A stretch of DNA of 64,000 nucleotides from Phaeosaccion multiseriatum (Eukaryota; Protista; Ochrophyta, other classes), in contig OZ218950.1 in the NCBI GenBank assembly GCA_965112735.1, positions 1,364,001-1,428,000 on the forward strand, in the 5' to 3' direction. Below, in pieces: positions 13,444 through 57,041 of this stretch (the first letter of the stretch is position 1; every line of letters starts with the position of its first letter). A model generated the notes under the pieces. It ran no database searches. It saw nothing but the letters and a program-made list of their open reading frames with translations, and had not been told where the DNA came from. Made by a program: the position numbers and the translations under genes.

Positions 13444-16400
13444 ATGCCCGGGGCCGGCAATGAGCCGGCACAGGGTCAGCCTGAGGGTGCAGCAACGGGT
13501 GTGGGGGAGGGACCGGCGGCGGAGACACCCGCAGCAGCAGCACCAGTGCCAGGCAAAGAGGAGGAGGCTCGAAGGGCGCCTCTCTCCCCCACGCACCCAA
13601 ACATGGGCAGCGGACCAAAGAGGAGCGAGAAAGGCGGCCATCGTCGTGGCGACATTGCCATTGTTGGAATGGCCTGCCGCTTCCCTGGAGGTGCCAACTC
13701 CGTTCCTGAGCTGTGGGACCTGCTCTGCAGGGAGGGCAGCGGCATCACAGGCATGCCCACAGATAGGTGCGTGACTGAGTGGGTGGTGACTGGGTCTGGG
13801 CGACGGAACCTTGGAGATGATGGGCAGCGTGCATCACGGCGCTTAGCGAGCATTTTGCCCCCGCCCCCTGGCTGCAGCCAACCGCAGCAGATCTTGCTGG
13901 AGTGGTTGGGCGGGAGGGGATGGTAGTGGACGGGATGAGGGCTGAAGAATCACTGTACACACGGTCGAGGAGAGCTGATGGCTTTCACACTTATCTTTCT
14001 CTCCTTCACCCCGCCCCCTCCCTGCTTCACTGCCCTTGCTGCCTGGCGCCTCCCAAAACACTCCTCCCGCGTTCGCGCACGTCTCTCTCACAGATGGGAG
14101 CCTGCGGCCTTGGACAGCGGCTACCCCACGCGGGGGGGCTTCCTCCCCGACGTAGAGCTGTTCGATAACGCCTTCTTCAACATCTCTGACCCGGAGGCGT
14201 CCGCAATGGACCCTCAGCAGCGAGGTACGCAAAGCGTCACAATGGTGACTCGCTCGGACTTGTTTCGTCTTCAGTACAACCAACAAGGGTCTCACATGCT
14301 TTGCTGTTCTCCTTAACACACGCAGTCATGTTGGAGGTGGCCTACGAGACGTTTCGCGACGCAGGGCTTGACAAGGAAGCTCTTTTTGAGAGCAAAACAG
14401 GTGGGTCAATCATGTACCCCTTTCAGTAGTAGTGATGACTGAAGCAAATAGTGAGCAGAATCAGGCGAAGAGGGAGAAACTGCTCTGATGGTCACTGACC
14501 ACACCGTATACCTCACCACAAAGTCCTCTTCTCGAACGTCCAGGAGTGTTCATCGGGTGCGGCAACGGAGACTGGATGTCCAAAATGCAGTCCCACGCTC
14601 CTGGACCGTACGTTGCTACGGGCGCCTCAGAGGCTCTCGTGGCCAATCGGGTCTCCTTCGCCCTCGGTCTGACTGGACCTTCGCAGACCATCAACACGGC
14701 CTCTTCCTCCTCTCTCGTGGCCGTGCACCAGGCCTGCCGAGGCCTCCAAAGCCGCGACTGCGACATGGCCCTGGCCGGAGGAGTGTCCATCATGACCAAC
14801 CCCGAGCCCTTCTCCGCCATGTCATCGCTGCACTTGCTGTCAGACAAGTGCATGGTCTTTGATGCCGCTGCCAACGGCTACGTGCGGGCAGGTGAGCACG
14901 AGCGGCGCCTGCGAGACTGTGAAGAAGACTAGAAGGACGAGAATGAGATTGACATGTGGAGGAGCTTACCGCAGCGCTTCTGATTATGATGATGGCCCTT
15001 TCCAGCTCCGCAAGGAGGGCGGAGAGAGGGAGAGGCGGAGGCGGGGAGAGGGAGAGAGGGGAAGAGGGAGAGGGAGAGGGAGAGGGAGAGGAAATGAGAT
15101 AGGGAGGGAGAGAAGGGGAGATGGGAGAGAAAAATCGGGAGAGCGAGAGAGGCAGCGGGACAGAGAGGGAGAGGGCGGGACGGAGATATGGAGAGGGGCA
15201 GGGGAACAGATATGGAGAAAGGGAAAGGGAGAGAAAGGGGGGAGGAAAGGGAAGGAGAGAAGTGCAGGATGAGTGGAGAGTGTTTCTTTGGGTCTGAGAT
15301 TGTCCTTGTTTTATAAACCTGATGAGCACGGCTCGACCACCCCCTAGCTCACCCTCCAGTCACCTCCATTTGCTGTTTGTGCCCTGCGGCTGCGAGTAGA
15401 GGGCTGCGGCGCTGTCGTGCTAAAGCGCCACGAAGACGCCATGGAGGCCCAAGACAACATATTGGCGGTGATTCGAGGCTCCTGCATCAATCACACGGGC
15501 CACGGCACGACCCTCACTGCCCCCAACGAAGCGGCACAGAAGGCCGCGGTCTTGGACTCCGTAGCAGAGGCGGGCATCGCTCTGTCCGACGTGAGCTTCA
15601 TCGAGGCGCACGGCACGGGCACGCCCCTCGGGGACCGCACGGAGTGGGCTTCCATCGCCGGCACCTACGGAGACCACGACCTGGCAACAGCCCGCCGTCT
15701 CGTCGTTGGAGCGATCAAGACCAACCTTGGTCACGCGGAGGCTGCGGCAGGCATTGCGGGGCTCATCAAGACGGTGCTGGTGCTCAGGCATGTCCAAGCG
15801 CCTCCCAACCTCAACCTGTCCACGCTGAGCCCTGCACTGAAGACGGAGGGCAACAGCGCTCTGCTGCCCATCCCCGGACGCATGACCCCCATCTCCACCC
15901 GAATCGGAGGTGCGTTGGGGCCCTTATTCAAAAACGTTTCCTGTGATCACTCACTCAGTCACTCAGCCACTCTCTCACTCACTCACTCACTCACTCACTC
16001 ACTCACTCACTCACTCACTCACTCACTCACTCACTCACTCACTCACTCACTCACCCACTCACCCACTCACTCACTCACTCACTCACTCACTCACTCACTC
16101 ACTCACTCACTCACTCACTCACTCACTCACTCACTCACTCACTCACTTACTCACTCACTCACTCACTCCCGCACTCACTCACTCACTCATTCACTCACTC
16201 ACTCACTCACCCACCCACCCACCCAATCACTCACTCACCCACTCCCACTCACTCACTTGCGTCTTCTTGAGACAAGTTAAGGAGGACTTTAGAGGGTATG
16301 AGCTATCGTATGATGGATAATGGCTGAACCCGTTCTCACCATGCACTTCTGCTCGCTGTGGTTACTTCTGCTCCTTTTGCAGCTGTCAACTCCTTTGGGT

Positions 16401-19400
16401 TTGGCGGTGTCAATGCCCACGTCATCCTGGAGGGGACGGCCATCTCACACTCGGAGAAGACCAACGTCAGAGCCTCCCCGTTCACGAGCAAAAAGGCCTT
16501 CAAGCTGCTGCCCGCCCCACCGACATCGGCGGCCGGAAAAAACTCCTTGGCAGTAGAGCTCCGCGGTGTCAGTCCAGCTGAACGCCAAGAGAGGCTTCGA
16601 TCCGTCATCTCCGACATCGCCCTCTCCAGCACGGCAGGCTCTGTCGGCATCGACATGGACAAACCTCTCATGGAGGCTGGCATGGATTCGTTGGCGCTCA
16701 TGGAGCTGAGGCAGCGTCTGCACCTGCTCACGGATATCCCCGTTAGCAGTGCCGCCCTCTTCGCCCACCCCACCGTGGCGGCCTTGGCGGAGTGGTTGGA
16801 CTCAGCGCTCATGGAGGGAAGTGCGAGCAGCCTACGCCTGTCCAGGAGGCTGCCATCGTCTGAAGGGGGGGGCGACGCTTCTGCCCCGCTGGCAATAGTG
16901 AGCATGGCGTGCCGCTTCCCCGGAGGCGCAGACAGTCCCGACGCTTTCTGGTCCATGCTGCTGGAGGGAAAGGACTGCATCACCGCCATGCCCTCGGGCA
17001 GACTCACTGGTGCGGCGAAGAAGTGGCACGGAGGCTTCATCGACGGCGTGGAGATGTTTGACAACGCCACATTTGGCATCTCCGTAGCCGAGGCCGAGGC
17101 CATGGACCCCACGCAGCGCATCATGCTCGAGGTCGGCTACGAGGCGCTGCACGAGGCAGGCTTCTCTATGGCCACGCTACGCAACAGCAACACCGGAGTG
17201 TTCGTGGGCTCCATGCAGCACGGCGACTGGGCCGCGCTGAACAAGGATGGTGACACCAAAGCTCACTCCATGATGGGCGAGTCAGCGGGCTGCCCTGCAA
17301 ATCGCCTGTCCTACGCACTGGGCTTGCGAGGCCCAAGCATATCGGTTGATACGCTTTGCTCTTCCTCGCTCGTTGCCTTGGACACGGCTTGTCGCTACCT
17401 TCGCTTCGGCACGTGCGATGCTGCGGTTGTGGGAGGAGTGAACCTGCTGCTCGGCTCCCGTTCCTTCGAGCAGCTCGACAAGGGAGGTTTCTTGTCCAAG
17501 GACTGGTACGTACGGGAGAATGGGGGGGCTGGCCTTGGGGAGCATCGAGCTCCTATAACTCGAGTAGAGTCATAAAGGGCTTGCTGACAGGTAAACACAA
17601 GCATCATCCCTCTCATCGGCTTGTCCTTCCTTCTCTGCCCCCATCTGCCTCGTGCTGCTACCGAAGGCGCTGCAAGACCTTCGACGCAGCGGCTAACGGC
17701 TACGTCCGAGGAGAGGGCTGCGGCGCCTTGGTGGTGAAGCGGCTTGACGACGCGGAGCGCAGTGGAGACAACATCCTGGCCGTCGTGCGGGGAAGCTCCG
17801 TGAACCACAATGGGCGCTCTATGCGGCTCACAGCACCCAGTCCAGACGCACAGCAGACGCTGATGCAGGCAGCCTTGGAGGAGGCGGGTGTAGCGGGCAG
17901 CGAGGTTCACTTCGTGGAGGCGCACGGCACGGGCACGGCTCTTGGCGACCCCATCGAGATGAGCGCTCTCAAAGCCGCCTACGGAGAAGGGCGGGAGAGC
18001 TCTTTCCCACTCATGGTGGGAGCGGTCAAGACTAACATTGGTCACTTGGAGGGCGCCGCAGGCATCGCGGGACTCATCAAGACCATCCTCGCGCTTCAGC
18101 ACCGAGCTGTGCCACGCAATCTGCACCTCGGCAAGCTCAATCCTGAGATTAGTGTTGATGGATTTGCGGTGGCATTCCCTTCGTCGAGACTATCTCCATT
18201 GGGTAGCGAGGAGGGACACCCCAATGGCAGCGAGGAGGTGCTGTACGCAGGAGTAAGCTCGTTCGGAGCAGGAGGCACCAACGCCCATGTGGTGCTGAGC
18301 AGCGCTGCGCCGAGAGTGGAGGGAGGGGTCTCGAAAGCGTCGAAGGGGAGTGAGGATACGGAGGTCGCCTCACCTGCGCACGTCTTTGTCTTCACGGGGC
18401 AAGGCTCGCAGTACCCCGGAATGGGCAAGGAGCTCTACGACGAGGTTAGTTGATTCGTTGCGCGCACCATCTCCGTCTCAGTCCTCTCTTGTCATTGCCT
18501 CTGTTGTGCTCCATCACCTCGGCCCACCTTCCCCCCATTCTCATATTCGTCTCTCTCTCTTGTTCCCTCCGCTGTTTGTGTCTCTCTTTTGGTGCCTCAA
18601 CAGCGTGCGGTCTTTCGCGAGTGCGTGCAGCGGTGCAGCAGGCTGCTCATGGAGCGGGCCTGGCTGGACAAGTCTGTGGTGGAGCTCATGTACCCGGCGG
18701 TCGCTGAGGACAGGGAGGAGGAGGAGTGGGAGACTGCACAAGCGCTGCTGAAGGAGACACGCTACTGCCAGCCGTGCCTGTTTGTGCTGGAATACGCCCT
18801 TTGCGCGCTGTGGAAGTCGGAGGGAGTGGAGCCGTCGATGGTGATGGGCCACAGTCTGGGCGAGGTAGTGGCGGCGTGCGTGGCCGGCGTCATGTCGCTG
18901 GAGGACGGGCTGATGCTGTCCGCCAAGAGAGGAGCCGCCATGCAGGCCTGCCCCGAGGGGGGTGGAGTGATGATCGCAGTGAAAACGGGCAGGGAAGCAG
19001 CAATGGCAAGTATCGACGCTGCAGGGGGGGCAGGCGAGGTGGTGCTGGCGTCGTCGAACGGACCGAGCGCGAGCGTGATCTCTGGGGCGCGCAGCGCTGT
19101 GGACAAGGTGGTGGAGAAGCTCACGGCAGATGGGGTGGGCTGCAAGGCCCTGGACGTGTCGCACGCCTTCCACTCTCCTCTGATGGAGCCCGCTGTACGT
19201 GCGCTGGAGGAGGCACTGAGGCAGGTGTCATTCAGCGCCCCACGCATCCCCCTGGTGTCCAACGTGACAGGCGAGGTGGTGAAGGCTGAGGAGGTGACGC
19301 AGGTAGCGTACTGGGTGCAACACATGCTGTCGCCGGTGCTGTTCGCGGAGAGTATCACCACGCTGCTCCGGGAGAGGCCTGAAGGTGTACGAGTGGTAGA

Positions 19401-22400
19401 GATTGGGCCCAGCTCTGTGCTGATCAACATGGCGCGGCAATGCGAGGGAGAGAGGTCGGACGTGATGTGGCAGCCTTCCATGCGGCGGGAGGGGAGCGAC
19501 ACCGCCTCGTTCGACAGAGCAGTGGCGGCAGTACTGGGCAAGCCCACACCTCTGTTCCCCACCCGTCGTGCGCTCCCTTGGTTCGAGCAGCAGGCGCATG
19601 CGATGGTACCAAGCGGCGGCGTCGTCGAGAAGAAGGGAGGAACACTCCTCTCATGCCGCTTCACCCCTCAGCTCAACGGCTTGCTGCAGGATCACGCGGT
19701 GGGAGGAGTGGTGCTCATGCCGGGCATGGGGTACATCGAGATTGGCCTTGCCGCCTTGCTGAAGGGCAAGCCTTTCCCTGGCGAGAGGCAAGTGGTCCTG
19801 AAGGGCCTGGTCTTCATATCTCCACTGGAAATTGCAGGCGCTCGTGCCCCCGATGTGGACCGTACGGTGGAGGGCTCCACCACTGTGGTCGCTTCTGAAG
19901 TCAGTGCCTTCGTCACTGCCCGCGGCAGCGTGCAGTTTATCGGAGGTCCCCACGGCAAGGCTGGAGAGACGGTGGCGAAGGCGACTTCCCTTCAATTGTG
20001 CACAAGGACGGAGGCAGAGACATTGGACGTGGCGCGGGTGAGAGCCGCGGTGGGGGACGAGGACATCGCCGAGGGGCTCTACCTCAAGCTTGCCAGTGCT
20101 GGTTATGACTACGGTGCCAGCTTTGTCCGAACGCAGCACCTGTTCGCAGCCAGTGGACAGGCCTTGTCGGTTGCGGCGGCAATGGATGGCAGCCTATCGG
20201 CGGAGTGGGAGATCAACGGCTTCTACCTCCACCCTGCAGTGTTGGATAATGCCGCGCACACGATGTTGGCGCTCTTGCCGGAGGAGCTGACGAGCAAGGC
20301 CTTTGCCGCCGTCTTCTTGCCCACCGGCTGCGAAGAGGTGCTTGTGCGAGGGGCCATCACGAGCGAGAAGGTGTGGGTTCATGCGGTGGTGAAGGAGGTG
20401 GACTCTCAAGCTCTTGCGATCGAGTGCGACATCGTGATAGCACACTTCGAGACGAAGCAAGTGCTCGTGCAGCTTAACCGCTTCCGGATGCAGCTCGCCC
20501 GAGGCTTCTCCCGCACCAACCCCGTCAGCCGAGCGCTGTATTCTCTAGAGTGGCTGCCCAACGATTCCATCTCCCGCAGCAGAGGTGACGTGGAAGAGCG
20601 AGAGGAAGCTTGGCTGCTCCTCACCAGCGGCGCTCGTGGCAGCTTGGACAAGGCAGCGAAAGAGAGCTTGCCCATCTCTGTGACACTGACGGAGAGGGAG
20701 GTCAAGATCATCGACGACTCCACCCTCGCGTCAGAAGCGCCAGCAGGATGGGGCCGTGTGGTGTGCACCTTGTTCGGCGGCAAGCAGCAGAGCCCCAGCC
20801 AAGAGGCACAGACGCTCCTCTCGTTGCTACAGCAGCTCTTACGAAGGCCAGCTCCCTTGATGGTGCTGGTGCAGGACACGCTGAGTGGCGGCGAGGGGTG
20901 GAGGCATCACTGGGTGTACGGCATGATTCGAACCGCTCGTGTCGAGCACCCTTCGCTGGCCATGACAGTGGTGGACGTGGGCAGCGAGGACCTGCCCAAG
21001 TGCTGGGCCATTGCATCACTGGGGCAGGACGTTTGGGTGCGAGACGGACGATATCTCACGCCTCAGCTGACTCGCTCCTCGGTAGTCAGTCTTCCCTTCT
21101 CCTTCGATCTCATGGCGAGGGGAAGCATCGAGGGAGGCTTGAAGCGCAGAGACGTACTCCCTTCCGAGAGACACGCTGCCTTGCAGGACGGGGAGATTGA
21201 AATTTGTGTCAAGGCGGTGGGGCTCAACTTCAGAGACGTGCTGAATGTGCTCGACCTGTACCCTGGCGACCCTGGGCAGCCTGGCATCGAGCTATCGGGG
21301 GTGGTCACTCGAGCATCGCGAAACTCGCGCTTTCAAGTGGGAGACAAGGTCTACGGGTTTCCGGACAAGGGCTGCTTCTGCTCCCACGTAACGACACGTG
21401 ACGTGTGTCTGGCCATCATGCCTTCCAACAGGACCTTTGATGACATGGCAGCGTTGCCTATCGCGTGGCTCACAGTGGTGCACGCCTTTGAGCAACTCGC
21501 TGGCTTGAAGCGTGGTGAGAAGGTGCTCATCCATGCCGCGTCAGATGGAGTGGGTCTGGTGGCCGTGCAGATTGCTCAGCGCATCGGAGCGGAGATCTAC
21601 GCCACTGCTGGATCCGAGGAGAAGCACGCCTACTTACGAGGCCTGGGCGTGAAGCACGTTGCGTCGTCGAGAGATGCGGAGGCCTTCAAGGCTTCCATGG
21701 GAGCTGCAAAGGTGGATGTGGTGCTCAATTGCCTGTCCGACAACTTCATCCCTTACTCTCTGGAGCTGCTGACGAAGAACGGGCGCTTCATGGAGATCGG
21801 CAAGCGAGGCGTGTGGACCGGGGAGGCGATGAAGGCTGCCAGGCCCGACGTGCTGTACGAGCTGATTGCGCTGGACTCCATGATAGCAGACGACTTCAAG
21901 GCCGAGAAGCAGGGCTGGGCGTTCGCTAGGCTGGAGCAGCTGACAGCGGACAGTGAGGCGGGCAGGGCTGAGGCGCTACCAGTGACGGCGTTCGACTTGA
22001 GGGATGAGCTTGCGGAGGCAATGAACTTCCTCAGAACTGCGAAGCATATAGGGAAGGTTGTGCTCAGTAGCCCTGAGTGTGGCATTCCCGTCGTGCGAGA
22101 TGGGACTTACGTTATCAGCGGTGGGCTGGGGGCACTGGGGCTGGCGACTGCGAAGCATTTGGCTGATAAAGGAGCTCGTCATCTTGTACTGCTCTCGCGA
22201 GGGGGAAGGGTCAAGGCGGACTCCCAGTCGCTGTGGGAGGAGCTTCTCAACGTGCCCGGCGGGGTGAGCACCAAGGCTGTATCGTGCGACGTGTCTAGCG
22301 CGCAGTCGCTTGAGAAGGCCCTAGGCACGGCGCTCAGCAGCATGCCGCCCGTGCGAGGTGTCATCCACGCTGCCGGCGTGCTCGACGATCGCTTGCTGGT

Positions 22401-46400: not shown

Positions 46401-49400
46401 TGTGGACAAGGTGGTGGAGAAGCTCACGGCAGATGGGGTGGGCTGCAAGGCCCTGGAGGTGTCGCACGCCTTCCACTCTCCTCTGATGGAGCCCGCTGTA
46501 CGTGCGCTGGAGGAGGTTCTGAGGCAGGTGTCATTCAGCGCCCCACGCATTCCCCTGGTGTCCAACGTGACGGGTGAGGTGGTGAAGGCTGAGGAGGTGA
46601 CGCAGGCGACGTACTGGGTGCAGCACATGCTGTCGCCAGTGCTGTTCGCAGAAGGCATCCACACGGTGGTGGAGCACTGGATGGAAGACGGGAGGGGGGC
46701 TGACCTGAGCATCGTTGAGTTGGGCCCCAACCCTGTGCTGAGCCGTATGGGGGCCAAGTGCGAGCGTCGCGAGGGGCTGGCGTGGATCTCCTCCCTCACG
46801 CGAGGGCAGAACTCTGAGGATTCGTTTGGAGCAGCCCTGGGCAGAGTAGCGGGGCCGGAGCATCTTGAGCTTTATCCGACTCGCCGATCATTTCCTTGGT
46901 ACAAGCCTCCGCTGGCGTTTATGCCGAATGGTGAGATGGTCCAGGAGGGAGATGGAATGAGGCTCCCCAGCCCCTTCTCCCCTTACCTTAAGGACCTTCT
47001 CAAGGACCATGCCGTCAACAATGTGGTGATCATTCCGGGGGTGACATACATTGAAGTGGGCGTCGTGGCTGCTCTAGGAGGAAGACAGCTCGGAGTGGAG
47101 CAGCAGGTAGTCCTGCAAGGAGCCAGCCTTGTGGTCCCACTGGAGATTGAGGGTTTCCAACAGGCGGGCATGGACCAGGCTCACAGCCGCCATACAATGG
47201 TCTGTGCCGGGATGAGTGCCCTTCACGCGGCAGATGGAAGCATGCAGTTCTTCGGAGGTGCCACGGGCGACAAGGGCACCACGGCAAGAATGAAGCACGT
47301 GTCTGTCACAGAGCGAAGCTCGGGGCGTGTTTCGTTGCACGTGGAATCCATTCGAGCCAGAGTTGGCGAGCAGGACAGATCGAGTGAGCTCTACAAGTCT
47401 TTCGCAGACGCCGGCTTCCAGTACGGCCCCCGCTTTCAGCGGACCCGCCATATGTACGGAGGGGACGGAGAGGTTCTGTCGGTCGTGTGTGCCATGGATG
47501 AGGAGCTGTGCGAGCCGTGGGAGATGAAGGGCTTTGCTCTGCACCCCGCGGTGCTGGACAATGCTACTCATACCATCATGCAAGCGCTGCCAAGGAAGCT
47601 GCTCAAGAAGGGGGGGGACTCTCCATTCCTACCTGCAGGCTTCGACGAAGTGGTTGTTTCCGCCTCCATGACGGGAAAGAACGTGTGGGTGCACACGAAG
47701 CTGAGTGAGGGCCAGTCAGTGGCGGACAGCGTCAAGTTTGACATCCGCATTGCAGACTTCGACAGCAAAGAGGTGCTCGTGGAGATGCGGGGCTTCCGCG
47801 TGCAGCGGGCGAGGAACTTTGTGCGTGTCAGCCCCGTTCGTCGTGCAATGTACGCATTGGAGTGGCAGGCCACTGAGCCGTCTACACAGGAGGAGCCCCC
47901 TGGTAGTGATACTGAGCCTGCTGAGGCGGCGGTGCCACAGAAGTGGCTGGTGGTTATTCCACAGGACGAGAGGGAGCGAGAGATGTCAATCATTGCTGCA
48001 GTGCGGCGCTGTGTTCCGGAGAACGTGCATGTACACACTCGATATGGGGGGGTGGACGCCTCCTGGGATGATGGTGCTCTTCTTCTTGGACAGGACGATT
48101 GGACTCGAGTCTTGTACGTGCCGATCTCTGGGGATGGCAAAGAGAACGTAGAAGGGGGTCACCAAGCACGAGCGGCCTACGCTCTGCTATCGCTACTCAG
48201 GAGCATGTTGTCCGCTACGTCGAATGTGCCGCTGACGGTCTTGACGAGGGGCGTCCAAAGCGGCGAGGACTGGCGTGACAGCTGGGTGACAGGTCTGGTG
48301 CGGACTGCGAGGATGGAGCACCCCTCCATGCAGATTGGTGTGGTGGACCTGAGCGACAAGAAGGTCCAAGACAGCGAGGTTGCCTTAGGCTTGGCCTTCC
48401 CTACTGCCACAGAAGATGTGTGGGTACACGATAGGCAGTGCTGGGCTCCTCAGCTTGTACACCAGCCCCTGCAGCTTCCCTTCTCGCTTGACTTGAAGGC
48501 AAGAGGCAGCATTGCCAACGCTTTCGCCCTTCGTGATGATGTGAACCATGGCAAACATCAGCCCCTTGACCCAGCTGGTAGCTCCGTACAGGTGGCAGTG
48601 AGGGCAGTTGGTCTTAACTTCCGGGACGTGCTGAATGTGCTGGACATGTACCCTGGCGATCCTGGAGATCCTTGCTCCGAGTTCGCCGGGGAGGTGATCA
48701 GTGTGGGAGGAATCTCGCGCTTCCGTGTCGGCGACGCAGTATTTGGCTTTGGGGATGCGGGATGTTTGCGCAGTCATATGACGACGAGTGATGTGTGTCT
48801 GGCCGTGATGCCGGCCGTGCTGAGCTTCGAGCAGGCCGCTGCACTTCCCACCGTGTTCCTCACCGTGATGAAGGGCCTTGAGGGCCTCAAGGCTGGAGAG
48901 AAGGTACTGATTCATGCCGCATCGGGCGGTGTGGGCCTTGCCGCCGTGCAGTATGCTCAGCGGGTGGGCGCAGAGGTGTACGCTACTGCCGGTGCTGCTG
49001 TGAAGCATGACTTCCTCCGGAGCTTGGGAGTGCAGCACATTGCGTCATCGAGAGACGCGGAGGCGTTCAAGCAGTCCATGGGTGAGTTGAGGGTGGACGT
49101 GGTGCTCAACTCTCTGAGTGATGACTACATTCCCTTCTCATTGGACATGCTGACAGAGGGAGGCAGATTCGTGGAGATTGGGAAGAGAGGTGTATGGAGT
49201 CATGAGCAGATGCGCACCACCCGGCCCGGTATACGGTACGAGCTGCTGGCATTGGATAGCATGATTGAGTCTGACTTTTCGGCGGGTGAGCCAGGCTGGA
49301 TCGGTGGCGGGCTGCAGCGTCTTGCTGAAGACTGCATGTCTGGCAATGTGAAGCCCTTACCGACCATACCCTTTGACATGAGGGAGGATACTGAGAAGGC

Positions 49401-52400
49401 CATGGCACTCATGCGCCAAGCGAAGCACATCGGCAAGGTGGTGCTGACCAACCCCTCGTACGGTGTGCCAGTTGCGTCCGATGGCACGTACGTCATCAGC
49501 GGCGGTCTGGGGGCTCTCGGGCTCGTAACGGCCCAGCACCTCGCGTCGAGGGGCGCTCGTCACTTGGTGCTGCTGTCGAGGAGTGGGAAGGTCGCTGAGA
49601 GCATGACTGAGCAGTGGCAGCGACTTCGAAAGACATCGCGTTTGACCATCCATACTCCGACCTGTGATGTTGCTGATGCTGAGGCACTTCGGACTTGCCT
49701 GGGGGGCGTGCTGCCTCTGCTGCCCCCTGTGCGCGGCGTGGTGCATGCTGCTGGGGTGCTGGATGATAAGCTGCTGGGAGAGCAAACGGTGGAGAGCGTG
49801 ACGAACGTGTTCCGACCAAAGGTGCAGGGGGCGATAAACTTGCACGAGCTTTCGTTGGCTTGGGCGAAGGAGGAGGGGCGCGCTCCTGGCCTTGACTTCT
49901 TCTTTTGCTTCACATCCATGGCGGGAGTATTGGGTAACGCTGGACAGGCCAACTACGCTGCGGCGAATGCGGCTGTGGACGGGCTGATGCGGCACAGGCG
50001 ACGCCTCGGGCTGGCAGGGACGTCATTGCAGTGGGGCCCGTGGGCTGATGTGGGTATGGCCGCCCAGCTCGATATTGTTCAAAAGCAGTTGGAGCTGGCG
50101 GGTGTGGGCACGGTGTCAGCTGAGCTGGGTATGTCGGCCTTCGATGCGGCTGCGACGCCGTCAGCGTCTTTAGCGGCCGTGGCCGTTCTGCCTGGCATGG
50201 ACTGGGCCAAGTTTGCAGACAGCGGGGGGGCGTCCCGCGGCTCATTCCTTCTGTCAGGGCTTGTCTCAACAGCAGCAGGCGCGTCGAGCAACACCGCACT
50301 AAGCAAAGAAGTGCGCGAGGAGCTGTTGGGGCTGTCCGCCGAAGACCGGAAACGTATGGTGAGCCTTGCGGTGATGGACATAGCCAAGGAGCTGATTGGG
50401 GAGGATGCCGATGAGCTGACCGACACCACCCTGCTGATGGAGGCAGGCCTTGATTCTTTGGCAACGGTGGAGATGCGTACTCGGTTGCAGTCTCGCTTTG
50501 GAGTGAATGTGACCAGCGATGTACTCTTCTCGTATCCAACGGTGGCAGCATTGGCGGTATGGGTCGACGATGAAGTACTGTCTCACGGTGTGGCTGGGCA
50601 TGGTGGCAGCGAAGAAGGGGCACCGCAGCAGCGAGTCTATGCGGAGCTCGAAGAGGAGCAGTCTCTCCACCAAGCGCGAGGAGAGCTCACGGCAGAGAGT
50701 CAGCGCCGCCGTCGTGGGCTGGCGGTGGTGGGCATGGCTTGTCGCTTCCCGGGGGGCGCAGATGACCCTGCCTCTTTCTGGGGGAACATTGTCGATGGAG
50801 TGGACTGTGCCACTCGGCTCCCCTTCGAGGGGTGGGGCAAGGAGACTTTAGGGCTGCACGGGGGCTTTTTGGATGATGAATTGGAGAGCTTCGATAATGA
50901 ACTCTTTGGCATTTCGTGCGGCGAGGCCAGCACCATGGACCCGAATCAGCGGTTGATGCTCCAAGTAGCGTACGAAGCACTTGCAGAGGCGGGCTTTGCT
51001 GACTTTGCGCGAGGAGACGCCGGAAGGGAGGAGTATGACGGCAAAAGGCAGGACAAGTATGCCATGAAGGGTTCAGACACGGGCGTCTTCATCGGTCTAT
51101 CCGGCACTGACTGGGCGACCGTGCAGAAGGACAGTGCACAGAAGGCTGATGCGTACACCCTCGGGGGAACGAGTGCCTCTCTGGTGGCCGGACGCATCAG
51201 CAATCGGCTTGGACTCGTGGGGCCAAGCTTAACGCTGGACACTGCGTGCTCGAGCTCGCTTGTTGCGCTGGAGGCCGCGTGCGACAAGCTCAGACTGGGC
51301 AAGTGCAAGACAGCCGTGGTGGGGGGCGTGAACTTACTTCTTCATCCCCAAGGCTTTGTTGCCCTCCGGAAGGCCGGTCTGCTTTCTAAGAAAGGGTAAG
51401 AGCAGGGGACGGCTGCATCTTATGTTTTGCAAAAGAGTGCTTCATTGCTTGGGTCGCTCCTCTAACTCATTGTCATCTCTTGCTTCCTCTTGTCTTGCTC
51501 TATCCATCTCAGTCGCACGGCCTCCTTTGCCGCCGGAGCCGATGGCTATGTCCGAGCGGAAGGCTGCGGAGCTGTGGTACTGAAACGCCTCTCGGACGCG
51601 GAAGCGGACCATGACAACATCCTGGCAGTCATTGAAGGATGCGCAGTCAATCACAACGGGCAAAGCGCTCAGATGACTGCCCCCAATGGCGTGGCGAAGC
51701 GAGAGGTCATGCGGAGGGCGTTGAGAGACGCAAGTCGCCGCGCCTGTGAAGTGGGATACGTGGAGGCGCACGGAACAGGCACGGTGCTGGGCGACTGCAT
51801 TGAGATGGGCGCTCTGCATGGGGTCTACCAGGAGGAGGAGCAATGGGGCGCTGAGGAGAAGGGGGGCGACGAAGGGGGGGTGTATCCGCTTCGCGTGGGT
51901 GCGGTGAAGACCAGCCTGGGACATATGGAGGGTGCATCGGGACTGGGGCAGCTCATTAAGGCTATTTTGGTCCTTCAGCACCAGCAGACACCTCCCAATC
52001 TGCATGGAGAGCACTTGTCCCCAGAGCTCGGCTACATTGAGGAGTCGCGCATTGCCCTCTGCTCGCAGCTCATTCCTTTCAAGACTCCTGTGGACTGGAA
52101 GGGCAGCAGCAGCAGCAGCAGCAGCAGTAGCGAGGAGGGAGGGGAAGCGCGAGCTGGTGCAGGCACGCTCATCGCAGCGGTGCACTCCTATGGCGTGGGC
52201 GGAACCAATGCTCACGTAATCTTGAGTAATTGGGGCGCAGCGGCGTTGCCGAGGGGGATAGGGCGTGAAGGCAGAGCTGAAGAGAAGAAGGAGACTACAG
52301 GGCCTCCATTGGTATTGAAGTTCTCCACTCGCTACCAGCCAAAGAACCCCACGCAAAGCGTCCAAAGGGTGATCGGGATCGAAGAAGACGTGCACGAGAA

Positions 52401-55282
52401 GGCAGTTGAAGCTTGCATGGAGATCGCTGCTCTTTTCCAGAAGGAGAGACAGCAGCAGCAGCTGCTGCAGCAGCGGATGAGAGACAGGAGGGCTGTCTCT
52501 CTTCAGGAGGAGGCAGACCTCGAGGCCCAGCTCCGAGTTGTTGGCGCTGAGACAAACATCAGCAGCACTACCTCCTTCATGGAGCTGGGCATGGATTCCC
52601 TGGCCGTGGTGCAGCTGGTCAATACGCTGCAGGACCAGTTTGAGCTGCAGGAGGAGCTGCCCCTTGCAGAGGTGCTTAAGAACCCTACACCAGAGGGCCT
52701 CGCCGCACTAGTTGTGGAGCAGAGACAACAAGGCCTTCATGGTGGGGGGGAAGGAGAGCACAACTACTGCAGCAGCGTGCCTGCTCACGAGACGATGGAG
52801 GAGAAGGAGCCGCTGCTGTGCGCGAAGATGATGTCCTCTGTGGGCTTCAAGGTGACGCAAGTGGTGCTCATTGCGGTGCTCTTGATGCATGTCTTCGCCT
52901 GCATGATCCTGCCCTACCGCTACCTCCGCTGGCTCTATACGGACTCCGGTATCGAGACTTCGGTGTGGGTGGGGAAGGACTTGAGTCATCTCGCCGATCC
53001 AGAGTCCTCTTACGCCTCTCCAGGTGGGGTTGTGGGTTGGGGGCCTCTGGTCTCCTTCAGCATCGTCCTGTGGTTCCTGACGTACTCCACTTCCGTGGTG
53101 TGCGTCAAGTGGCTTGTCGTGGGGACGTATTTTGAGGGGACCGTCGCACTTCACGCATCGTACTATCACCGCTGGTGGTACGTGAATGCGTGTATGAATG
53201 TGTGGGAAGCGGTGGGCGGCTTTCTTACCCTCGGCACACCCGGCATCACTTTGTTCTACAAGCTGCTGGGTGCCGACGTCTCCTGGCGCTGCTCCATCTC
53301 CACCTTTCTCCGAGAGTTTGACCTCGTCACGATTGGGGCCGGCGCTTCGGTGACTGGCTCGCTGTATCCTCGCTCCTTCACGCCGTCAAGCATGGTCTTT
53401 CGCAGCATTGTTGTGGGTGCGGGCGCAGAGGTGGAGGCGGGGGCTGTGGTGTACGGCGGTGTGACGGTGGGCGAGGGCACACGGGTCGCTCGCCTGTCCG
53501 TTGTATACCCCCTGACGCGTATTCCTGCTGGTGATGGCGTGTGGGAGGGCAACCCGGCGCAGAGGAAACAGAGCCGCCACAGCGCCGAGGAGGGGGGTGG
53601 ACGAGCTGTGACGACCAACCCAGAGAGAGGCCTCCTGCAAGGTGTGGCGCGTATGGCGCTAATTACGGCTTCTGTCATGCTCGCGGCCTTCTTTAGCTGG
53701 ATGCCCGCCGTTGCGTACACGTTCCTTGGTGTGTCAAGAGACTTTCGATACGCAGGAGTCATGAGCACGGTGTTCAGAGTGTCTGGGGCCCTCCTGACGC
53801 TTGCCCTGTACCTGGTCCTGCTCAAGTGGGTCATTGCGCCGAGCTGCCTGCTTCGACCCGGCGTGTACACCGACAACTTTGGAAGGGCGCTTCGTCGATG
53901 GTACCTCGGCAAGCTTCACAGCCAAGTGGCGAGCTATGTGCTCGTCTTCGCCCGCTATCGCCTGTTCGACTGGTGGGCTAGGGCTCTGGGTGTGCGCATG
54001 GGAAGGGGAGCTGTGAACTCGGGTGACGGCCAGTACAATCCCGAGACGGCCCACCTCATTTCGCTTGGTGAGTGCGGGGCTTACTTGGTACTTTACTGTT
54101 TCTTGGCGATGACTCAGAGCGAGGCTGGACGGGGTACTTGTTTGCGCGTCTTGTCTCTTATAAACCCCTGATGCGTCTTCTACCACCAACGTACTTTTTG
54201 CAGGAAACGGCAGCTTTGCGTCGTACACCATGTTTGCCACGGATGACTCGGTGGGGGGGGGAAGACGAGTGCGAGGGACCTGCACCGTTGGGGACGATGC
54301 GCTGCTCGGGCTCATGACCATTATGGAGCCTGGTGCTGCCGTTCCGGCACAGCAAGGTGTTGAAATGTTCACCGCTGTAGCAGCTGGGGACACAGTCATG
54401 TCGACATGGGGTCAGGGCGCATTAGTGGGTGGAGGGAGGGAGGATGTGGCCTCATCTGCAGCGCTCTCGGGACCCGGCGCACTCACAAACGGAGACGTTC
54501 AGCGCTGGGCCGCCTTTGTCGCCAGAGAGATGTGGGGCACACTGCTGATGCTGGCGACCCATATTGGGACTCTGGTGGTGGTGGTGGAGGTGGGGACGCA
54601 ACTAAACCAAAGCTTAGCTGAGGAGCGCGGCATGAGCTTCGAAGTCATGCTGCCCCTGTACGGGGCCGTGTGCGGCTGTGCAGGAACCCTTGCCCTTGCC
54701 CTTCTCTTGGTGGCTTCCAAGTGGTTGATGGTGGGCAACTTTAGCCGAGGGGCGGATCCAAGCACGGGAGCGTGTATGTCCTCACAGGATATGTATCGGA
54801 GCGCGCGGACGCAGTACTTCCGCCTTCTGACCAGGATGCGACACTTCTTCCGACAGTTCATTCTGACGCCCCTTCTCGGTGGTACATGGCTATTCAATCT
54901 GTACGCTCGAGCGTCAAGCGCGCGACCGAAGGACATTTCGCTGGACGCACTCATCTTGGCGCGCGATGTGCATGATTTTGACTTTATCACATTGGAGGCG
55001 GGTGCCATACTTGACGTGCGAAGTAACTTGTTGGGTCATGTCCTTCGCCCAAGAGCTGCTGGTGCTGGTGGAGACGGTAGTACCGGGCTGCTGGTCATGG
55101 CCCCCTCTCGAGTGGAGGCAGGAGCAGTCTTTCACCCCCACGCCCGTATTAGCAACGGCACGGTCGGGAGTCGGGCCGAGCTCTTTGCCTATAGCGTGCC
55201 ACTCATGGGGCAGAGGCTGCGCGATGGAGGCAAGTACGGTGGCCGCGGAGTGCCAGGATTGCTCAAGAGCAAGCTGTCGTGA
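13444..55282 (+). CDS. Giant 8-KS modular type I polyketide synthase with C-terminal Pls/TIGR02353-type membrane domain, about 12,983 aa. Exons 13444-13766, 14094-14224, 14326-14400, 14544-14891, 15400-15909, 16383-17505, 17667-18444, 18604-23882, 23995-29043, 29221-35292, 35453-39739, 39895-45003, 45162-51395, 51513-54067, 54204-55282
   Basis: Exons sum to 38,952 nt (divisible by 3), and every junction is GT..AG and phase-compatible. Splicing restores continuous KS motifs (e.g. GFLSxDW|RCKTFD). Canonical KS (TACSSS, EAHGTGT, KTNIGH), AT (GHSLG, HAFH), DH (HxVxxxxxxP, LD), ER (HAASGGVG), KR (GGLGALG, YAAAN) and ACP (GxDS) motifs. Confidence 0.93.
13650..16810 (+). other. PKS module 1 (loading): KS with active-site Cys>Ser, then ACP; no AT
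   Basis: NTASSSSL (Ser codon 14702-14704), EAHGTGT, KTNLGHAE, then GMDSL. Confidence 0.88.
15945..16257. repeat. (TCAC)n microsatellite in PKS intron 5
   Basis: Directly visible. Confidence 0.95.
16885..23190 (+). other. PKS module 2: KS-AT(malonyl)-DH-ER*-KR-ACP
   Basis: DTLCSSS; GHSLG/HAFH; DHAVGGVVLMP; ER NADPH motif altered to HAASDGVG; KR with LDD; GLDSM. Confidence 0.9.
23255..28350 (+). other. PKS module 3: KS-DH-ER-KR-ACP (AT-less)
   Basis: KS end GTNAHVLL is followed about 25 aa later by LFPNRVAFPW and the DH motif EHAVGGVVLMP; no GHSxG present. Confidence 0.9.
28415..34600 (+). other. PKS module 4: KS-AT(malonyl)-DH-ER-KR-ACP
   Basis: DTACSSS, GHSLG/HAFH, DHTVNNVVIIP, HAASGGVG, LDD, GLDSL. 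Confidence 0.9.
34670..39050 (+). other. PKS module 5: KS-AT(malonyl)-KR-ACP (no DH or ER; hydroxyl-retaining)
   Basis: AT is followed directly by the KR structural region (LYVVEW). KR reads HAAGVTGAKG without LDD, catalytic QSAYAGAN; ACP GLDSM. Confidence 0.88.
39110..44310 (+). other. PKS module 6: KS-DH-ER-KR-ACP (AT-less)
   Basis: QTACSSS; KS end followed by LYPTRQAFRW and DHAVNNVVIIP; no AT motifs. Confidence 0.9.
44380..50580 (+). other. PKS module 7: KS-AT(malonyl)-DH-ER-KR-ACP
   Basis: DTACSSS, GHSLG/HAFH, DHAVNNVVIIP, HAASGGVG, LDD, GLDSL. Confidence 0.9.
50715..52720 (+). other. PKS module 8: divergent KS-ACP (no AT, no reductive domains)
   Basis: DTACSSS, EAHGTGT, KTSLGHME, HSYGVGGTNAH, then a Gln-rich linker and GMDSL. 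Confidence 0.85.
52840..55282 (+). other. C-terminal Pls-like (TIGR02353-type) membrane domain: three units of [two TM helices + hexapeptide beta-helix]
   Basis: Three KW(L/V) motifs close TM pairs (KWLVVG, KWVIAP, KWLMVG). Each is followed by a G(T)xxxxx(F/W)xRxLGx-like segment and hexapeptide repeats: FDLVTIGAGASV..IVVGAGAEVEAGAVV; HLISLGNG..CTVGDDALLG; DFDFITLEAGAILD..LLGHV..SRVEAGAVF. Confidence 0.8.
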
Positions 55283-55699
55283 GACTTCTGGAGCGAGGAA
55301 TCGACGGATTTCAGTCTATTGTATCGCTAAGAGTGCAAGCCGCTCTGTTGTATGTAGTACAGCTCTTAGTTCAAGGTTTGCAAGGGAGGGCCCTTCCTTA
55401 TCATGAAAATAGTCAAGGAGACTCGGTCGGAGGAAGAGAGAGAGGGAAGCAAAGCAGTGTATTCTATACTTAGTAGCCCGTAGGGGAACGTCGAGTGTCT
55501 CCAGGCAACACATCCGTCATCAGTACGCAAATGTCGCGAGGTATCTCCACCTAACAAGAGACTAGCTCTTTAGATTTATTGTTTCTCTTCGCCTCGACCG
55601 TCAGTTAACGCCCTCATCCGAGTGAGATACAAGACCTTCATCTCTCTCTCCCTGCGCAAGGAGTCACCGCGTGTCCTTGATGGTTATGGCTGCTACAGC

Positions 55700-57041
55700 A
55701 AGCAAGTACGGCACGCAGAGCAGTCCTGCTTGCTGTAGCGGGGCACACGCCTCCTTCGCCTCGAAACCTCCTCCCAGCTACCACACCTCCTCTCTTCCTC
55801 TCAGACCACGCGGGCGCAGCCTCCCTCTTCCAGTGTCAGCTCGTACCCCTTCTCTCCCATCTTGCTCACATTCAGCGTCGCACCCTCACCGCATGAAGCC
55901 GGGAAGGGTCACGAGCGAGCGTTCAGCCTTGCCTCCTTGCCGACGCGCACGCTCTCAACATACATTACCCCACCGTGCTCCAGAATGTGGTGTGCCTCTC
56001 CACCACAGCGTCATCCTCCAGGGTGAGCAGGTCGGGGTCTGGAACGACAAGGCAATCAATGTGCACATCCCATGACATTCGATCCGGCTCTCAGTCCTAG
56101 CAGGCGCAGAGGATACCACGGTAGGAGGGTGAGCCCGCGAACAGCTCAACGACAGGTCCCATGGCGAGAGTCTGGCAGGCTGTGGCAAGCAAAGATCCAA
56201 CGAACGTACTCCAAAGACGAGCATGTAAGGGAGTGGGCCTTCCTCCGGGCGGGCATCACGACCTACTTCAGTGCAGCAGAAGTTACCGCCACCAGCGCAA
56301 AGTACAAGATCAACCATAGCGGCAGCGTCACGAGGATGCTCTTGTCACCCAGCTGCAGCACGACTTCGCTGATGGCGAAACTCAGTAACGTGGCCAGGTG
56401 TACAGATGGAGAGCAAGTACACACGGCTGCAGCACCGGCATGAGCAGCATGGCGAATACTTGCAATGCACTGAGCTTCTCCGTCGACGCGCTGCCGGTTG
56501 CAATTTGCAGCAAAGGGCTGCCTCCAATCTGCCCCACCGCCGCAGTGGCCGGACTTGTTTGCAGCCTGCGGTCGCTAATGCTTCGTCGGGGCTCGTCCGC
56601 TCTAGTGGGATGCTCGCCAGGAGCATCACCATGGAAATGATATCCACACGAGGGGGCATGGAAGACACCCCTCCCTGTCCTTCAAGACAGATGGACCGTT
56701 CTTGGAGCTCGTCTCCCTCCTCTCGCACAACACTCAAAGCTCCAACCTCACAGTCCGCCGGAATGCTCGCGCCGGGCAGCGCCACGCAAAAGGCTCCGAG
56801 TAGCGCGATGTCACCGATTCGCACTGTGCCCGTTACACACGTAGCGCTGCCTGCCTTTCGCGTCGACCTCAAACATGCCCGTGATGGGGGCGGACGGAAT
56901 GCCTAGATGAGACTTCGTCCCGACGGAGAGCAACTCCGGCTCGTACGGGAACTCTGCGAAACTCGTCACACCCAGGTCAAAGCGAGCCCCTATGCTGGCC
57001 AGCCAAGCGTTCTCTGCCTGTGTCGCTACTGTAAAGGGCAT
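55700..57041 (-). pseudogene. Decayed paralog of the Pls-type membrane/beta-helix terminal domain
   Basis: Fragments NAWLASIGARF..YEPELLSVGTKS, GTVRIGDIALLGAFCVALPGASI, LK*VVMP..EYVRW (apparent TGG>TAG at 56263-56265) and VPDPDLLTLEDDAVVE lie in different frames with several stops. Confidence 0.7.

What the first reader, a model, noticed from the sequence alone, without database searches (positions are those of the whole stretch)
13444..55282. Giant algal modular PKS ending in a membrane-embedded Pls-type ligase domain instead of a thioesterase: candidate polyketide-polymerising or exporting megasynthase
Seen: one continuous spliced reading frame of about 12,983 aa with 8 KS and 8 ACP domains and no TE, reductase or condensation domain. 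After the last ACP come six hydrophobic helices interleaved with three hexapeptide beta-helix units, with a His (LLGHV) in the third. Established: six TM segments around three tandem soluble domains is the C-terminal topology of Streptomyces epsilon-poly-L-lysine synthetase, where it polymerises carrier-bound monomers at the membrane, and it usually follows an NRPS A-T didomain. Inference: here a multi-module reducing PKS builds a hydroxy-acyl monomer, and the membrane domain polymerises it (polyester or estolide) or transfers it to a cell-surface acceptor, for example a wall biopolymer. I know of no characterised enzyme with this combination.
Basis: partly seen in the sequence, partly recalled or inferred. 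Interest (0 to 1): 0.93.

Follow-up and report, generated by a model that had tools for sequence, protein, structure and literature searches.

The report
Giant PKS with Pls-type membrane end
A 13,000-residue algal polyketide synthase really does end in a membrane-embedded domain of the kind that makes polylysine in bacteria. That domain belongs to an unstudied eukaryotic branch always fused to lipid-building enzymes, so it most likely hands the finished fatty chain to an acceptor at a membrane rather than being a proven polymerase.

Summary
A 15-exon gene (13444-55282, + strand, 14 GT..AG introns) gives an unbroken 12,983-aa reading frame with 8 KS, 4 AT, 5 DH, 5 ER, 6 KR and 8 ACP domains and no TE, reductase or condensation domain. 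KS1 has Ser in place of the catalytic Cys, so it is a loader and seven modules extend the chain.

The last ACP is followed, in the same exon, by a ~780-aa Pls/PosA-type terminal domain. It has six hydrophobic helices in three pairs and three left-handed beta-helix units. The family's 99%-invariant His sits in unit 3 (LLGHV, codon 55037-55039). Support comes from TIGR02353 (E 2e-21, well below the curated cut-off), an end-to-end alignment with an Ectocarpus protein, and a fold match of the window's last exon to PosA.

The domain does not group with the bacterial polyamino-acid polymerases. It sits in a eukaryote-only clade whose partners are fatty acyl-AMP ligases or PKSs, and it lacks the bacterial QTHLFEDR motif.

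Best reading: a membrane-bound acyl-ACP acyltransferase that releases the chain onto an unknown nucleophile. Polymerisation remains possible. I found no transcript data and no paper on this fusion. First-stage notes report at least ten similar megasynthases elsewhere in this genome.

The parts
13444..55282 (+). Whole gene model: 15 exons, 14 GT..AG introns, 12,983 aa including the stop at 55280-55282
   Evidence: Exon chain assembled and translated without an internal stop. Junctions were chosen by fit to intact KS and AT sequences.
13651..16433 (+). KS1 in 6 exons. The active-site Cys is replaced by Ser (NTASSSS, Ser codon about 14702-14704) and both His are kept: a probable loading or decarboxylating KS.
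   Evidence: Pfam PF00109/PF02801; alignment of the eight KS.
16649..16798 (+). ACP1 (GMDSL)
   Evidence: PF00550; motif.
16886..23169 (+). Module 2: KS2-AT-DH-ER-KR-ACP2. AT has GHSLG and HAFH. The ER NADPH motif is the variant AASDGVG.
   Evidence: Pfam; motifs.
23257..28327 (+). Module 3: KS3-DH-ER-KR-ACP3, no AT
   Evidence: Pfam; motifs.
28415..34573 (+). Module 4: KS4-AT-DH-ER-KR-ACP4
   Evidence: Pfam; motifs.
34673..39026 (+). Module 5: KS5-AT-KR-ACP5. KR is the only reductive domain, so this module should leave a hydroxyl.
   Evidence: Pfam; KR Tyr present.
39114..44284 (+). Module 6: KS6-DH-ER-KR-ACP6, no AT
   Evidence: Pfam; motifs.
44384..50556 (+). Module 7: KS7-AT-DH-ER-KR-ACP7
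   Evidence: Pfam; motifs.
50719..52713 (+). Module 8: KS8 (Cys-His-His intact, split by intron 51396-51512) and ACP8 (52540-52713, GMDSL). No AT and no reductive domain.
   Evidence: Pfam; KS alignment.
52861..55279 (+). Pls/PosA-type terminal domain, about 780 aa. TM1 52861-52917 and TM2 53050-53118, then beta-helix unit 1. TM3 53641-53712 and TM4 53779-53835, then unit 2, which is interrupted by intron 54068-54203. TM5 54530-54586 and TM6 54656-54742, then unit 3.
   Evidence: TIGR02353 E 1.8e-21. Hydropathy. End-to-end alignment with Ectocarpus CBJ30872 residues 1267-2050. Conserved columns. Fold matches to PosA.
55037..55039 (+). Codon of the family-invariant His (LLGHV; residue 12903 of the model) in beta-helix unit 3: the presumed catalytic base
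   Evidence: His in 99% of 77 aligned domains. Nearly invariant in A1 and A2. Lies in a beta-helix strand of the model.
54068..54203 (+). Last intron (GTGAGT..TTTTGCAG), inside beta-helix unit 2
   Evidence: The canonical GTGAGT..TTTTGCAG pair among the in-frame, stop-free GT..AG combinations. The homologue alignment continues across it.

Best explanation
One eukaryotic gene encodes a loading KS(Ser)-ACP pair followed by seven extension modules of a malonyl-specific, highly reducing type I PKS. Its last carrier, ACP8, is fused in the same exon to a Pls/PosA-type terminal domain. That domain has three pairs of membrane helices, each followed by a left-handed beta-helix unit. By homology the three units pack as a pseudo-trimer on the same side of the membrane as the PKS.

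Most likely this domain is the chain-release catalyst. It takes the acyl thioester on ACP8 as donor and, using the invariant His of unit 3 as base, transfers the chain to a hydroxyl or amino group of an acceptor at the membrane. The product would be an ester- or amide-linked lipid that stays in or crosses that membrane. If the line is colinear, the chain is C16 (acetyl plus 7 malonyl): 9-hydroxy-3-oxo-hexadecanoyl.

Shown: gene structure, domain content, catalytic residues, family and clade placement, and fold.
Inferred: the transfer chemistry, the topology, the product and the acceptor, which is unknown.
For: - The fusion does not depend on a splice. The C-terminal half of KS8, ACP8, TM1-TM4 and beta-helix unit 1 lie in one uninterrupted exon, 51513-54067.
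- No other release domain is present.
- Family membership at superfamily level. TIGR02353 gives E 1.8e-21. The 779-aa domain aligns over positions 10-769 with the Ectocarpus C-terminus. Most columns that are at least 70% conserved are retained, including the invariant His, the unit-1 Asp and the KW motifs after TM2 and TM6.
- Fold. The model of the window's last exon (pLDDT 81.5) matches PosA residues 1012-1321 at E 3.9e-9, TM 0.60. The model of the nearest homologue (pLDDT 85.8) matches PosA 622-1332 at E 3e-29, TM 0.68.
- Clade. The domain is sister to Ectocarpus (support 1.0) inside a eukaryote-only clade (support 0.99). Partners in that clade score as fatty-acid-AMP ligases (218-341 bits) rather than amino-acid adenylation domains, or are PKSs. 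The bacterial members carry TIGR01733 A domains.
- The single beta-helix units resemble CoA- or ACP-dependent acyltransferases.
- Variants in DNA runs lean synonymous in this domain, 6 synonymous to 2 non-synonymous.
- From my own knowledge: LpxA and LpxD are beta-helix trimers that use acyl-ACP donors and a catalytic His. In Pls the carrier-bound thioester is the donor and the acceptor is not enzyme-bound (Yamanaka et al. 2008).
Against: - No transcript, protein or product data. The public runs found are DNA-like.
- The TIGR02353 score (76 bits on the larger piece) is far below the curated 423-bit cut-off.
- Every characterised member of the superfamily is a polymerase of diamino acids, so a non-polymerising transferase has no experimental precedent in this family.
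- Nothing in the sequence identifies an acceptor.
- The product prediction assumes colinearity, trans-loading of the four AT-less modules, and an active ER2 despite its variant motif.
- Topology rests on hydropathy and predicted models only.
Confidence: 0.58

Rival explanations
1. Polymerase. The domain repeatedly condenses ACP8-bound hydroxy-acyl units onto the free hydroxyl of a growing, untethered chain, as Pls does with lysine. This would give an estolide-type polyester that is extruded through or deposited at the membrane.
For: All characterised relatives (Pls, PosA and others) are iterative polymerases (PMC8506220, PMC8117764, PMC10522769). The module design leaves exactly one hydroxyl per chain, from the KR-only module 5. 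Each added unit would therefore bring a new nucleophile. The global fold is shared with PosA.
Against: The domain lies outside the polymerase clade. It lacks the QTHLFEDRxMK motif around the His. Most clade relatives are fed by fatty acyl-AMP ligases, whose ordinary substrates have no second nucleophile. Initiation needs a free hydroxy-acid monomer, and no hydrolase is present. A follow-up on a paralogue in this genome reached the same reservation (not independent evidence).
Confidence: 0.2
2. Release without an external acceptor. The domain uses water or the chain's own 9-hydroxyl, giving a free 3-oxo acid (which would decarboxylate readily to a methyl ketone) or a 10-membered lactone.
For: There is no TE for these routine release modes. 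The predicted chain has an internal hydroxyl.
Against: Beta-helix acyltransferases and Pls-type enzymes join two substrates. I know of no hydrolytic or cyclising member. A six-helix membrane platform seems needless for hydrolysis.
Confidence: 0.08
3. The domain is mainly a membrane anchor or export conduit with little or no catalysis, and release is done in trans by another enzyme.
For: The sequence around the His has diverged from the proven enzymes. The HMM score is low.
Against: The invariant His, the Asp and most conserved Gly, Lys and Trp columns are kept. Substitutions lean synonymous. The domain recurs at the end of assembly lines that lack any other release domain.
Confidence: 0.07
4. 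Gene-model artefact or pseudogene: the modules belong to more than one transcript, or the locus is not expressed.
For: There is no RNA evidence. Kb-scale internal repeats of 84-98% identity could hide assembly errors.
Against: The model has 38,952 coding bases with no stop. Every inter-module intron splits a KS at the same codon, so both halves are needed for any KS to work. ACP8 and the membrane domain share an exon. Independent DNA unitigs match the sequence across 53902-54387 with no differences.
Confidence: 0.05

Closest known systems
Epsilon-poly-L-lysine synthetase Pls (Streptomyces albulus), delta-poly-L-ornithine synthetase PosA (Acinetobacter baumannii) and related cationic homopoly(amino acid) synthetases
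   Same: A terminal domain of about 730-780 aa placed directly after a carrier domain. Three pairs of membrane helices alternate with three beta-helix units. One invariant His lies in unit 3. The global predicted fold is shared (PMC10522769).
   Different: The upstream partner here is an 8-KS PKS, not an A-T didomain. The donor is therefore a polyketide acyl-ACP, not an aminoacyl-S-carrier. The domain is in a separate eukaryotic clade, lacks QTHLFEDRxMK, and scores far below the TIGR02353 cut-off.
Uncharacterised eukaryotic FAAL-ACP-(Pls-type) proteins, for example Ectocarpus siliculosus CBJ30872 (annotated 'long-chain acyl-CoA synthetase'), with relatives in Amorphochlora, Bigelowiella, Chromera, Creolimax, Salpingoeca and Picozoa
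   Same: Nearest relatives of the terminal domain (34% identity, sister with support 1.0). All place a lipid-type acyl-ACP in front of the domain.
   Different: They load a ready-made fatty acid through one FAAL. This gene builds its chain with seven PKS extension modules. None has a known function.
Other PKS-(Pls-type) fusions: Stygiella incarcerata transcript (4,380 aa; FAAL-ACP-KS-AT-KR-ACP-KS-DH-ER-KR-ACP-domain) and a eukaryotic metagenome gene (2,920 aa; FAAL-ACP-KS-ACP-domain)
   Same: A type I PKS ends in the same domain with no TE. The Stygiella protein comes from a transcriptome, so such fusions are expressed as one ORF.
   Different: They have one or two KS and are FAAL-primed. This gene has 8 KS, no FAAL, and a KS(Ser)-ACP loader.
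Left-handed beta-helix acyltransferases that use acyl-ACP (LpxA, LpxD) or acyl-CoA (serine and galactoside acetyltransferases, GlmU)
   Same: Beta-helix units and a catalytic His. The trimeric packing is reproduced here as a pseudo-trimer. LpxA and LpxD use an acyl-thioester donor on a carrier (fold hits; the LpxA/LpxD mechanism is from my own knowledge).
   Different: Those are soluble homotrimers with three active sites. Here three different units sit in one chain, are membrane-embedded, and carry one conserved His. Similarity covers single units only (TM by query about 0.1-0.3).

Membership tests
Pls/PosA-type NRPS terminal domain (TIGR02353) | Final domain of about 700 aa, placed directly after a carrier (PP-binding) domain | tested here: met
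   ACP8 (PF00550, E 6e-11) lies at 52540-52713. TM1 starts at 52861. The domain runs to the stop codon.
Pls/PosA-type NRPS terminal domain (TIGR02353) | Six membrane helices in three pairs | tested here: met
   Six Kyte-Doolittle peaks in three pairs. Long helix pairs sit at matching positions in the AlphaFold models of the homologue and of the window's last exon. No dedicated TM predictor was available.
Pls/PosA-type NRPS terminal domain (TIGR02353) | Three tandem beta-helix (C1-C3) units with approximate three-fold similarity | tested here: met
   Collinear alignment to 76 family domains. Internal repeats: unit 1 vs 2 at E 1e-3, unit 1 vs 3 at E 2e-4. Beta-helix strands appear in the models. 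The whole-domain model was made for the Ectocarpus proxy, not for the window protein.
Pls/PosA-type NRPS terminal domain (TIGR02353) | HMM score at or above the curated cut-off (423 bits) | tested here: not met
   76.2 bits (profile positions 56-370) for the exon-14 piece and 17.5 bits for the exon-15 piece. The spliced protein could not be submitted as one sequence.
Pls/PosA-type NRPS terminal domain (TIGR02353) | Family-invariant residues, above all the His of unit 3 | tested here: met
   His (99% of 77 sequences), the unit-1 Asp (99%), the KW motifs and the invariant Gly columns are all present in the window.
Pls/PosA-type NRPS terminal domain (TIGR02353) | Global fold like a characterised member | tested here: met
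   The model of the window's last exon matches the PosA AlphaFold model at residues 1012-1321, E 3.9e-9, TM 0.60. The nearest homologue matches PosA 622-1332, E 3e-29, TM 0.68. Both sides are predictions; no solved structure exists (PMC10522769).
Cationic homopoly(amino acid) synthetases (Pls, PosA and similar), in the strict functional sense | Amino-acid adenylation domain plus T domain upstream | tested here: not met
   There is no AMP-binding domain anywhere in the gene, and tblastn with FAAL/A-containing homologues finds none in the window. The upstream partner is a PKS.
Cationic homopoly(amino acid) synthetases (Pls, PosA and similar), in the strict functional sense | QTHLFEDR(V/I)MK motif around the catalytic His | tested here: not met
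   The window has LLGHVLRPR. The whole eukaryotic lipid-linked clade keeps only the His, usually as GH.
Cationic homopoly(amino acid) synthetases (Pls, PosA and similar), in the strict functional sense | Iterative polymerisation of the carrier-bound monomer | not testable with these tools
   Needs biochemistry.
Modular type I polyketide synthase (cis-AT, highly reducing) | KS with Cys-His-His, AT with GHSxG, ACP with DSL Ser, and reductive loops with intact motifs | tested here: met
   KS2-KS8 have Cys-His-His, while KS1 has Ser-His-His. The 4 ATs have GHSLG and HAFH. There are 8 ACP. DH, KR and ER motifs are present, with ER2 a variant. Modules 1, 3, 6 and 8 lack an AT.
Modular type I polyketide synthase (cis-AT, highly reducing) | Canonical release domain (TE, reductase or condensation) | tested here: not met
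   No PF00975, PF07993 or PF00668 hit in any exon.

The most novel reading that the evidence does not exclude
The enzyme is a membrane-embedded polyester synthase. The PKS makes a C16 chain with a single mid-chain hydroxyl, and the Pls-type domain strings these units together and extrudes an aliphatic, estolide- or cutin-like polymer. Together with the many paralogues noted in this genome, that would be a previously unknown route to resistant algal surface or wall polymers.
Probability: 0.17. Interest if true: 0.92.

Novelty: new variant of a known kind. Interest (0 to 1): 0.7.

Why it matters
Every known PKS release step uses a thioesterase, a reductase, a condensation-type domain or a trans-acting enzyme. 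Here release appears to be handed to a membrane-embedded, pseudo-trimeric beta-helix acyltransferase that is known only from bacterial and fungal polylysine-type synthetases.

The analysis also defines a eukaryote-wide, unstudied branch of that domain family. It always sits behind lipid-activating enzymes (FAAL or PKS) and is found in brown algae, chlorarachniophytes, Chromera, choanoflagellates, ichthyosporeans, Picozoa and a jakobid.

Finding its acceptor would reveal a new class of lipid conjugates or polymers in protists. It would also give a new off-loading part for assembly-line engineering. The proposal is directly testable with an ACP8-domain construct.

Tried and rejected
- Transcript evidence. 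The four runs returned under kind 'rna' are unitigs that run straight through the introns, so they are DNA. One 'joint' at 51400/51500 has AG..CT ends and is not the predicted intron. No conclusion on splicing is possible.
- Solved structure of Pls. None is in the PDB by sequence; only gamma-carbonic anhydrases and acetyltransferases match one beta-helix unit.
- Organism identification. A search with a 2,077-aa PKS exon gave only about 34%-identical bacterial PKSs. The best C-terminal hit is 34% identical, from Ectocarpus.
- A FAAL or A domain hidden upstream. tblastn with three FAAL-containing homologues found none in the window.
- A second Pls-type gene downstream on the minus strand, suggested by a hexapeptide-like ORF at 56345-56872. 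tblastn found no further copy, and Pfam gives only E 0.003.
- Literature. Nine full-text searches found no paper on PKS or FAAL fused to a Pls-type domain.
- The whole spliced terminal domain could not be given to the HMM or structure tools, because only contiguous references are allowed. I used the two exon pieces and the Ectocarpus proxy instead.
Full report
**1. Is it there?**

The + strand between 13144 and 55282 carries a chain of very long ORFs separated by gaps of about 100-500 bases. Using intact KS and AT sequences as guides, I placed 14 canonical GT..AG introns. The 15 exons total 38,952 coding bases and translate to 12,983 aa with no internal stop.

Pfam finds 8 KS, 4 AT, 5 DH, 5 ER, 6 KR and 8 ACP domains, and no thioesterase, terminal reductase or condensation domain. 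The order is:
- KS1-ACP
- KS2-AT-DH-ER-KR-ACP
- KS3-DH-ER-KR-ACP
- KS4-AT-DH-ER-KR-ACP
- KS5-AT-KR-ACP
- KS6-DH-ER-KR-ACP
- KS7-AT-DH-ER-KR-ACP
- KS8-ACP-terminal domain

**2. Details of the PKS**

- KS2 to KS7 are each split by an intron at the same codon (FLSxDW|RCKTFD), and KS8 is split at the corresponding point (LLSKKG|RTASFA). KS1 lacks this intron and has five others. No KS works unless its two halves are spliced together, which argues for one transcript.
- KS1 reads NTASSSS where the others read D/Q-T-A/L-C-SSS, and it keeps both His. Established work on KS-Q loaders and Cys mutants of fatty acid synthase suggests a loading or decarboxylating KS. That leaves seven condensing modules.
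- All four ATs have GHSLG and HAFH, the malonyl signature.
- DH, KR and ER motifs are intact apart from an AASDGVG variant in ER2.
- If the line is colinear and the AT-less modules are loaded in trans, the ACP8-bound chain is 9-hydroxy-3-oxo-hexadecanoyl. This is inference.
- Kb-scale blocks inside the gene are 84-98% identical at DNA level, for example 30929-37154 against 40631-46848 at 91%. The line grew by recent module duplication.

**3. The terminal domain**

ACP8 (52540-52713), TM1-TM4 and the first beta-helix unit lie in the same exon as the C-terminal half of KS8 (51513-54067). The fusion of carrier and membrane domain therefore does not rest on any splice.

- Hydropathy gives six peaks in three pairs, each pair followed by KWLVVG, KWVIAP or KWLMVG.
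- NCBIfam TIGR02353 (Pls/PosA family) matches the exon-14 piece at E 1.8e-21 (76 bits, profile 56-370 of 695) and the exon-15 piece at E 0.001. Both are far below the 423-bit cut-off.
- A phmmer search of 1.84 billion representatives gives 931 hits.
- The spliced 779-aa domain aligns over positions 10-769 with residues 1267-2050 of Ectocarpus CBJ30872.
- In an alignment of 77 complete domains, the window keeps most columns that are at least 70% conserved.
- Internal repeats are weak but collinear.

**4. Fold**

No Pls-type structure is solved (PMC10522769 says the same and describes an AlphaFold model with three beta-helices packed on six bent helices).

| Model | Quality | Best match | Score |
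|---|---|---|---|
| Ectocarpus domain | pLDDT 85.8, pTM 0.89 | PosA residues 622-1332 | E 3e-29, TM 0.68 |
| Window's own last exon, 358 aa | pLDDT 81.5 | PosA residues 1012-1321 | E 3.9e-9, TM 0.60 |

The window model shows beta-helix, two long helices, core helices and a second beta-helix that holds the His. PDB hits are only single-unit acetyltransferases.

**5. Where it belongs**

A tree of the domain splits in two.

- The large clade is the bacterial A-T type. Its N-terminal domains pass TIGR01733 (427 and 334 bits), and the His sits in QTHLFEDRxMK.
- The window's domain is sister to Ectocarpus (support 1.0) inside a clade with support 0.99, or 0.85 when Stygiella is included. Every member with a taxon label is eukaryotic: Ectocarpus, Amorphochlora, Bigelowiella, Chromera, Creolimax, Salpingoeca, Picozoa and Stygiella. 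One metagenome contig in the clade has TPX2 and RGS neighbours.
- Partners in this clade are FAAL-type ligases (218-341 bits to FAAL models, below cut-off on TIGR01733) plus ACP, or PKSs.
- Only the His survives of the bacterial motif.
- Two of the 150 best hits also carry KS domains.
- First-stage notes and one follow-up report at least ten further megasynthases with this ending in the same genome. I could not check them.

**6. Mechanism**

Shown: a carrier-bound acyl thioester is delivered to a Pls-type pseudo-trimeric beta-helix domain that keeps its invariant His, and no other release domain exists.

Inferred: the domain releases the chain by acyl transfer to a nucleophile at the membrane. 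Two precedents support this. Pls transfers a carrier-bound lysyl group to a free amine, and LpxA and LpxD transfer from acyl-ACP (both from my own knowledge). The lipid-type partners across the clade and the loss of the acidic FED motif argue for an acceptor other than a cationic diamino acid, and against simply carrying the polymerase function over.

A polyester remains possible, because the predicted chain has exactly one hydroxyl.

**7. Limits**

- No RNA data; the runs found are DNA.
- The organism is not identified.
- The whole spliced domain could not be scored or folded as one sequence.
- Variant counts from DNA unitigs (20 synonymous, 17 non-synonymous, 3 intronic; 6 to 2 in the terminal domain) hint at constraint but may mix alleles and paralogues.
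- I found no paper on this fusion.

**8. Verdict**

This is a new variant of a known kind: a Pls/PosA-type terminal domain recruited as the release domain of a giant PKS, within an uncharacterised eukaryotic lipid-linked clade.

Noticed in passing
window 14702-14704 (KS1 active site): KS1 has Ser in place of the catalytic Cys (NTASSSS) but keeps both His. It looks like a KS-Q-style loader, with Ser instead of Gln and no AT of its own.
   Followed up: partly
introns 17506-17666, 23883-23994, 29044-29220, 35293-35452, 39740-39894, 45004-45161, 51396-51512: KS2-KS7 are interrupted at the same codon (FLSxDW|RCKTFD) and KS8 at the corresponding point. The intron therefore predates the module duplications. 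KS1 lacks it and has five different introns.
   Followed up: partly
30929-37154 vs 40631-46848; 21058-23833 vs 26216-28993; 23979-24621 vs 29205-29847: Kb-scale internal DNA repeats of 91%, 93% and 98% identity show recent tandem duplication or gene conversion of modules. They are also a possible source of assembly error.
   Followed up: partly
modules 1, 3, 6 and 8 (for example 24460-24752 and 40360-40688): Four of the eight modules have no AT, although the line is otherwise cis-AT. They would need loading by a neighbouring AT or one acting in trans.
   Followed up: no
about 21500-21560 (ER of module 2): The NADPH motif reads AASDGVG instead of AASGGVG as in the other four ERs. ER2 may be impaired, which would leave a double bond.
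   Followed up: no
window 50500-55600 in DNA runs X1-X4: There are many single-base variants at full unitig depth: 20 synonymous, 17 non-synonymous and 3 intronic among the 40 listed. They point to two haplotypes, other strains or close paralogues.
   Followed up: partly
56345-56872, minus strand: A 175-aa ORF has a weak hexapeptide-repeat hit (E 0.003) just downstream of the gene, convergent with it. It is not a further Pls-type copy by tblastn.
   Followed up: partly
4194-5784 (+) and 8783-9862 (-): Upstream neighbours are a Sec1/Vps45-like gene in several exons and a 359-aa ankyrin-repeat ORF.
   Followed up: partly
15910-16382; 58076-60276; 62148-63992: Long simple-sequence tracts: a repeat read as (THSL)n inside an intron, then stretches read as poly-Glu, poly-Pro, poly-Gly or poly-Ser depending on frame, and acidic and poly-Gln runs in a 614-aa ORF.
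   Followed up: no
other pieces of the same genome (scan notes): First-stage notes list at least ten other assembly lines (FAAL-PKS, NRPS, PKS-NRPS, and a four-gene cluster) ending in Pls-type domains. If real, this organism uses the domain as its general release module.
   Followed up: no
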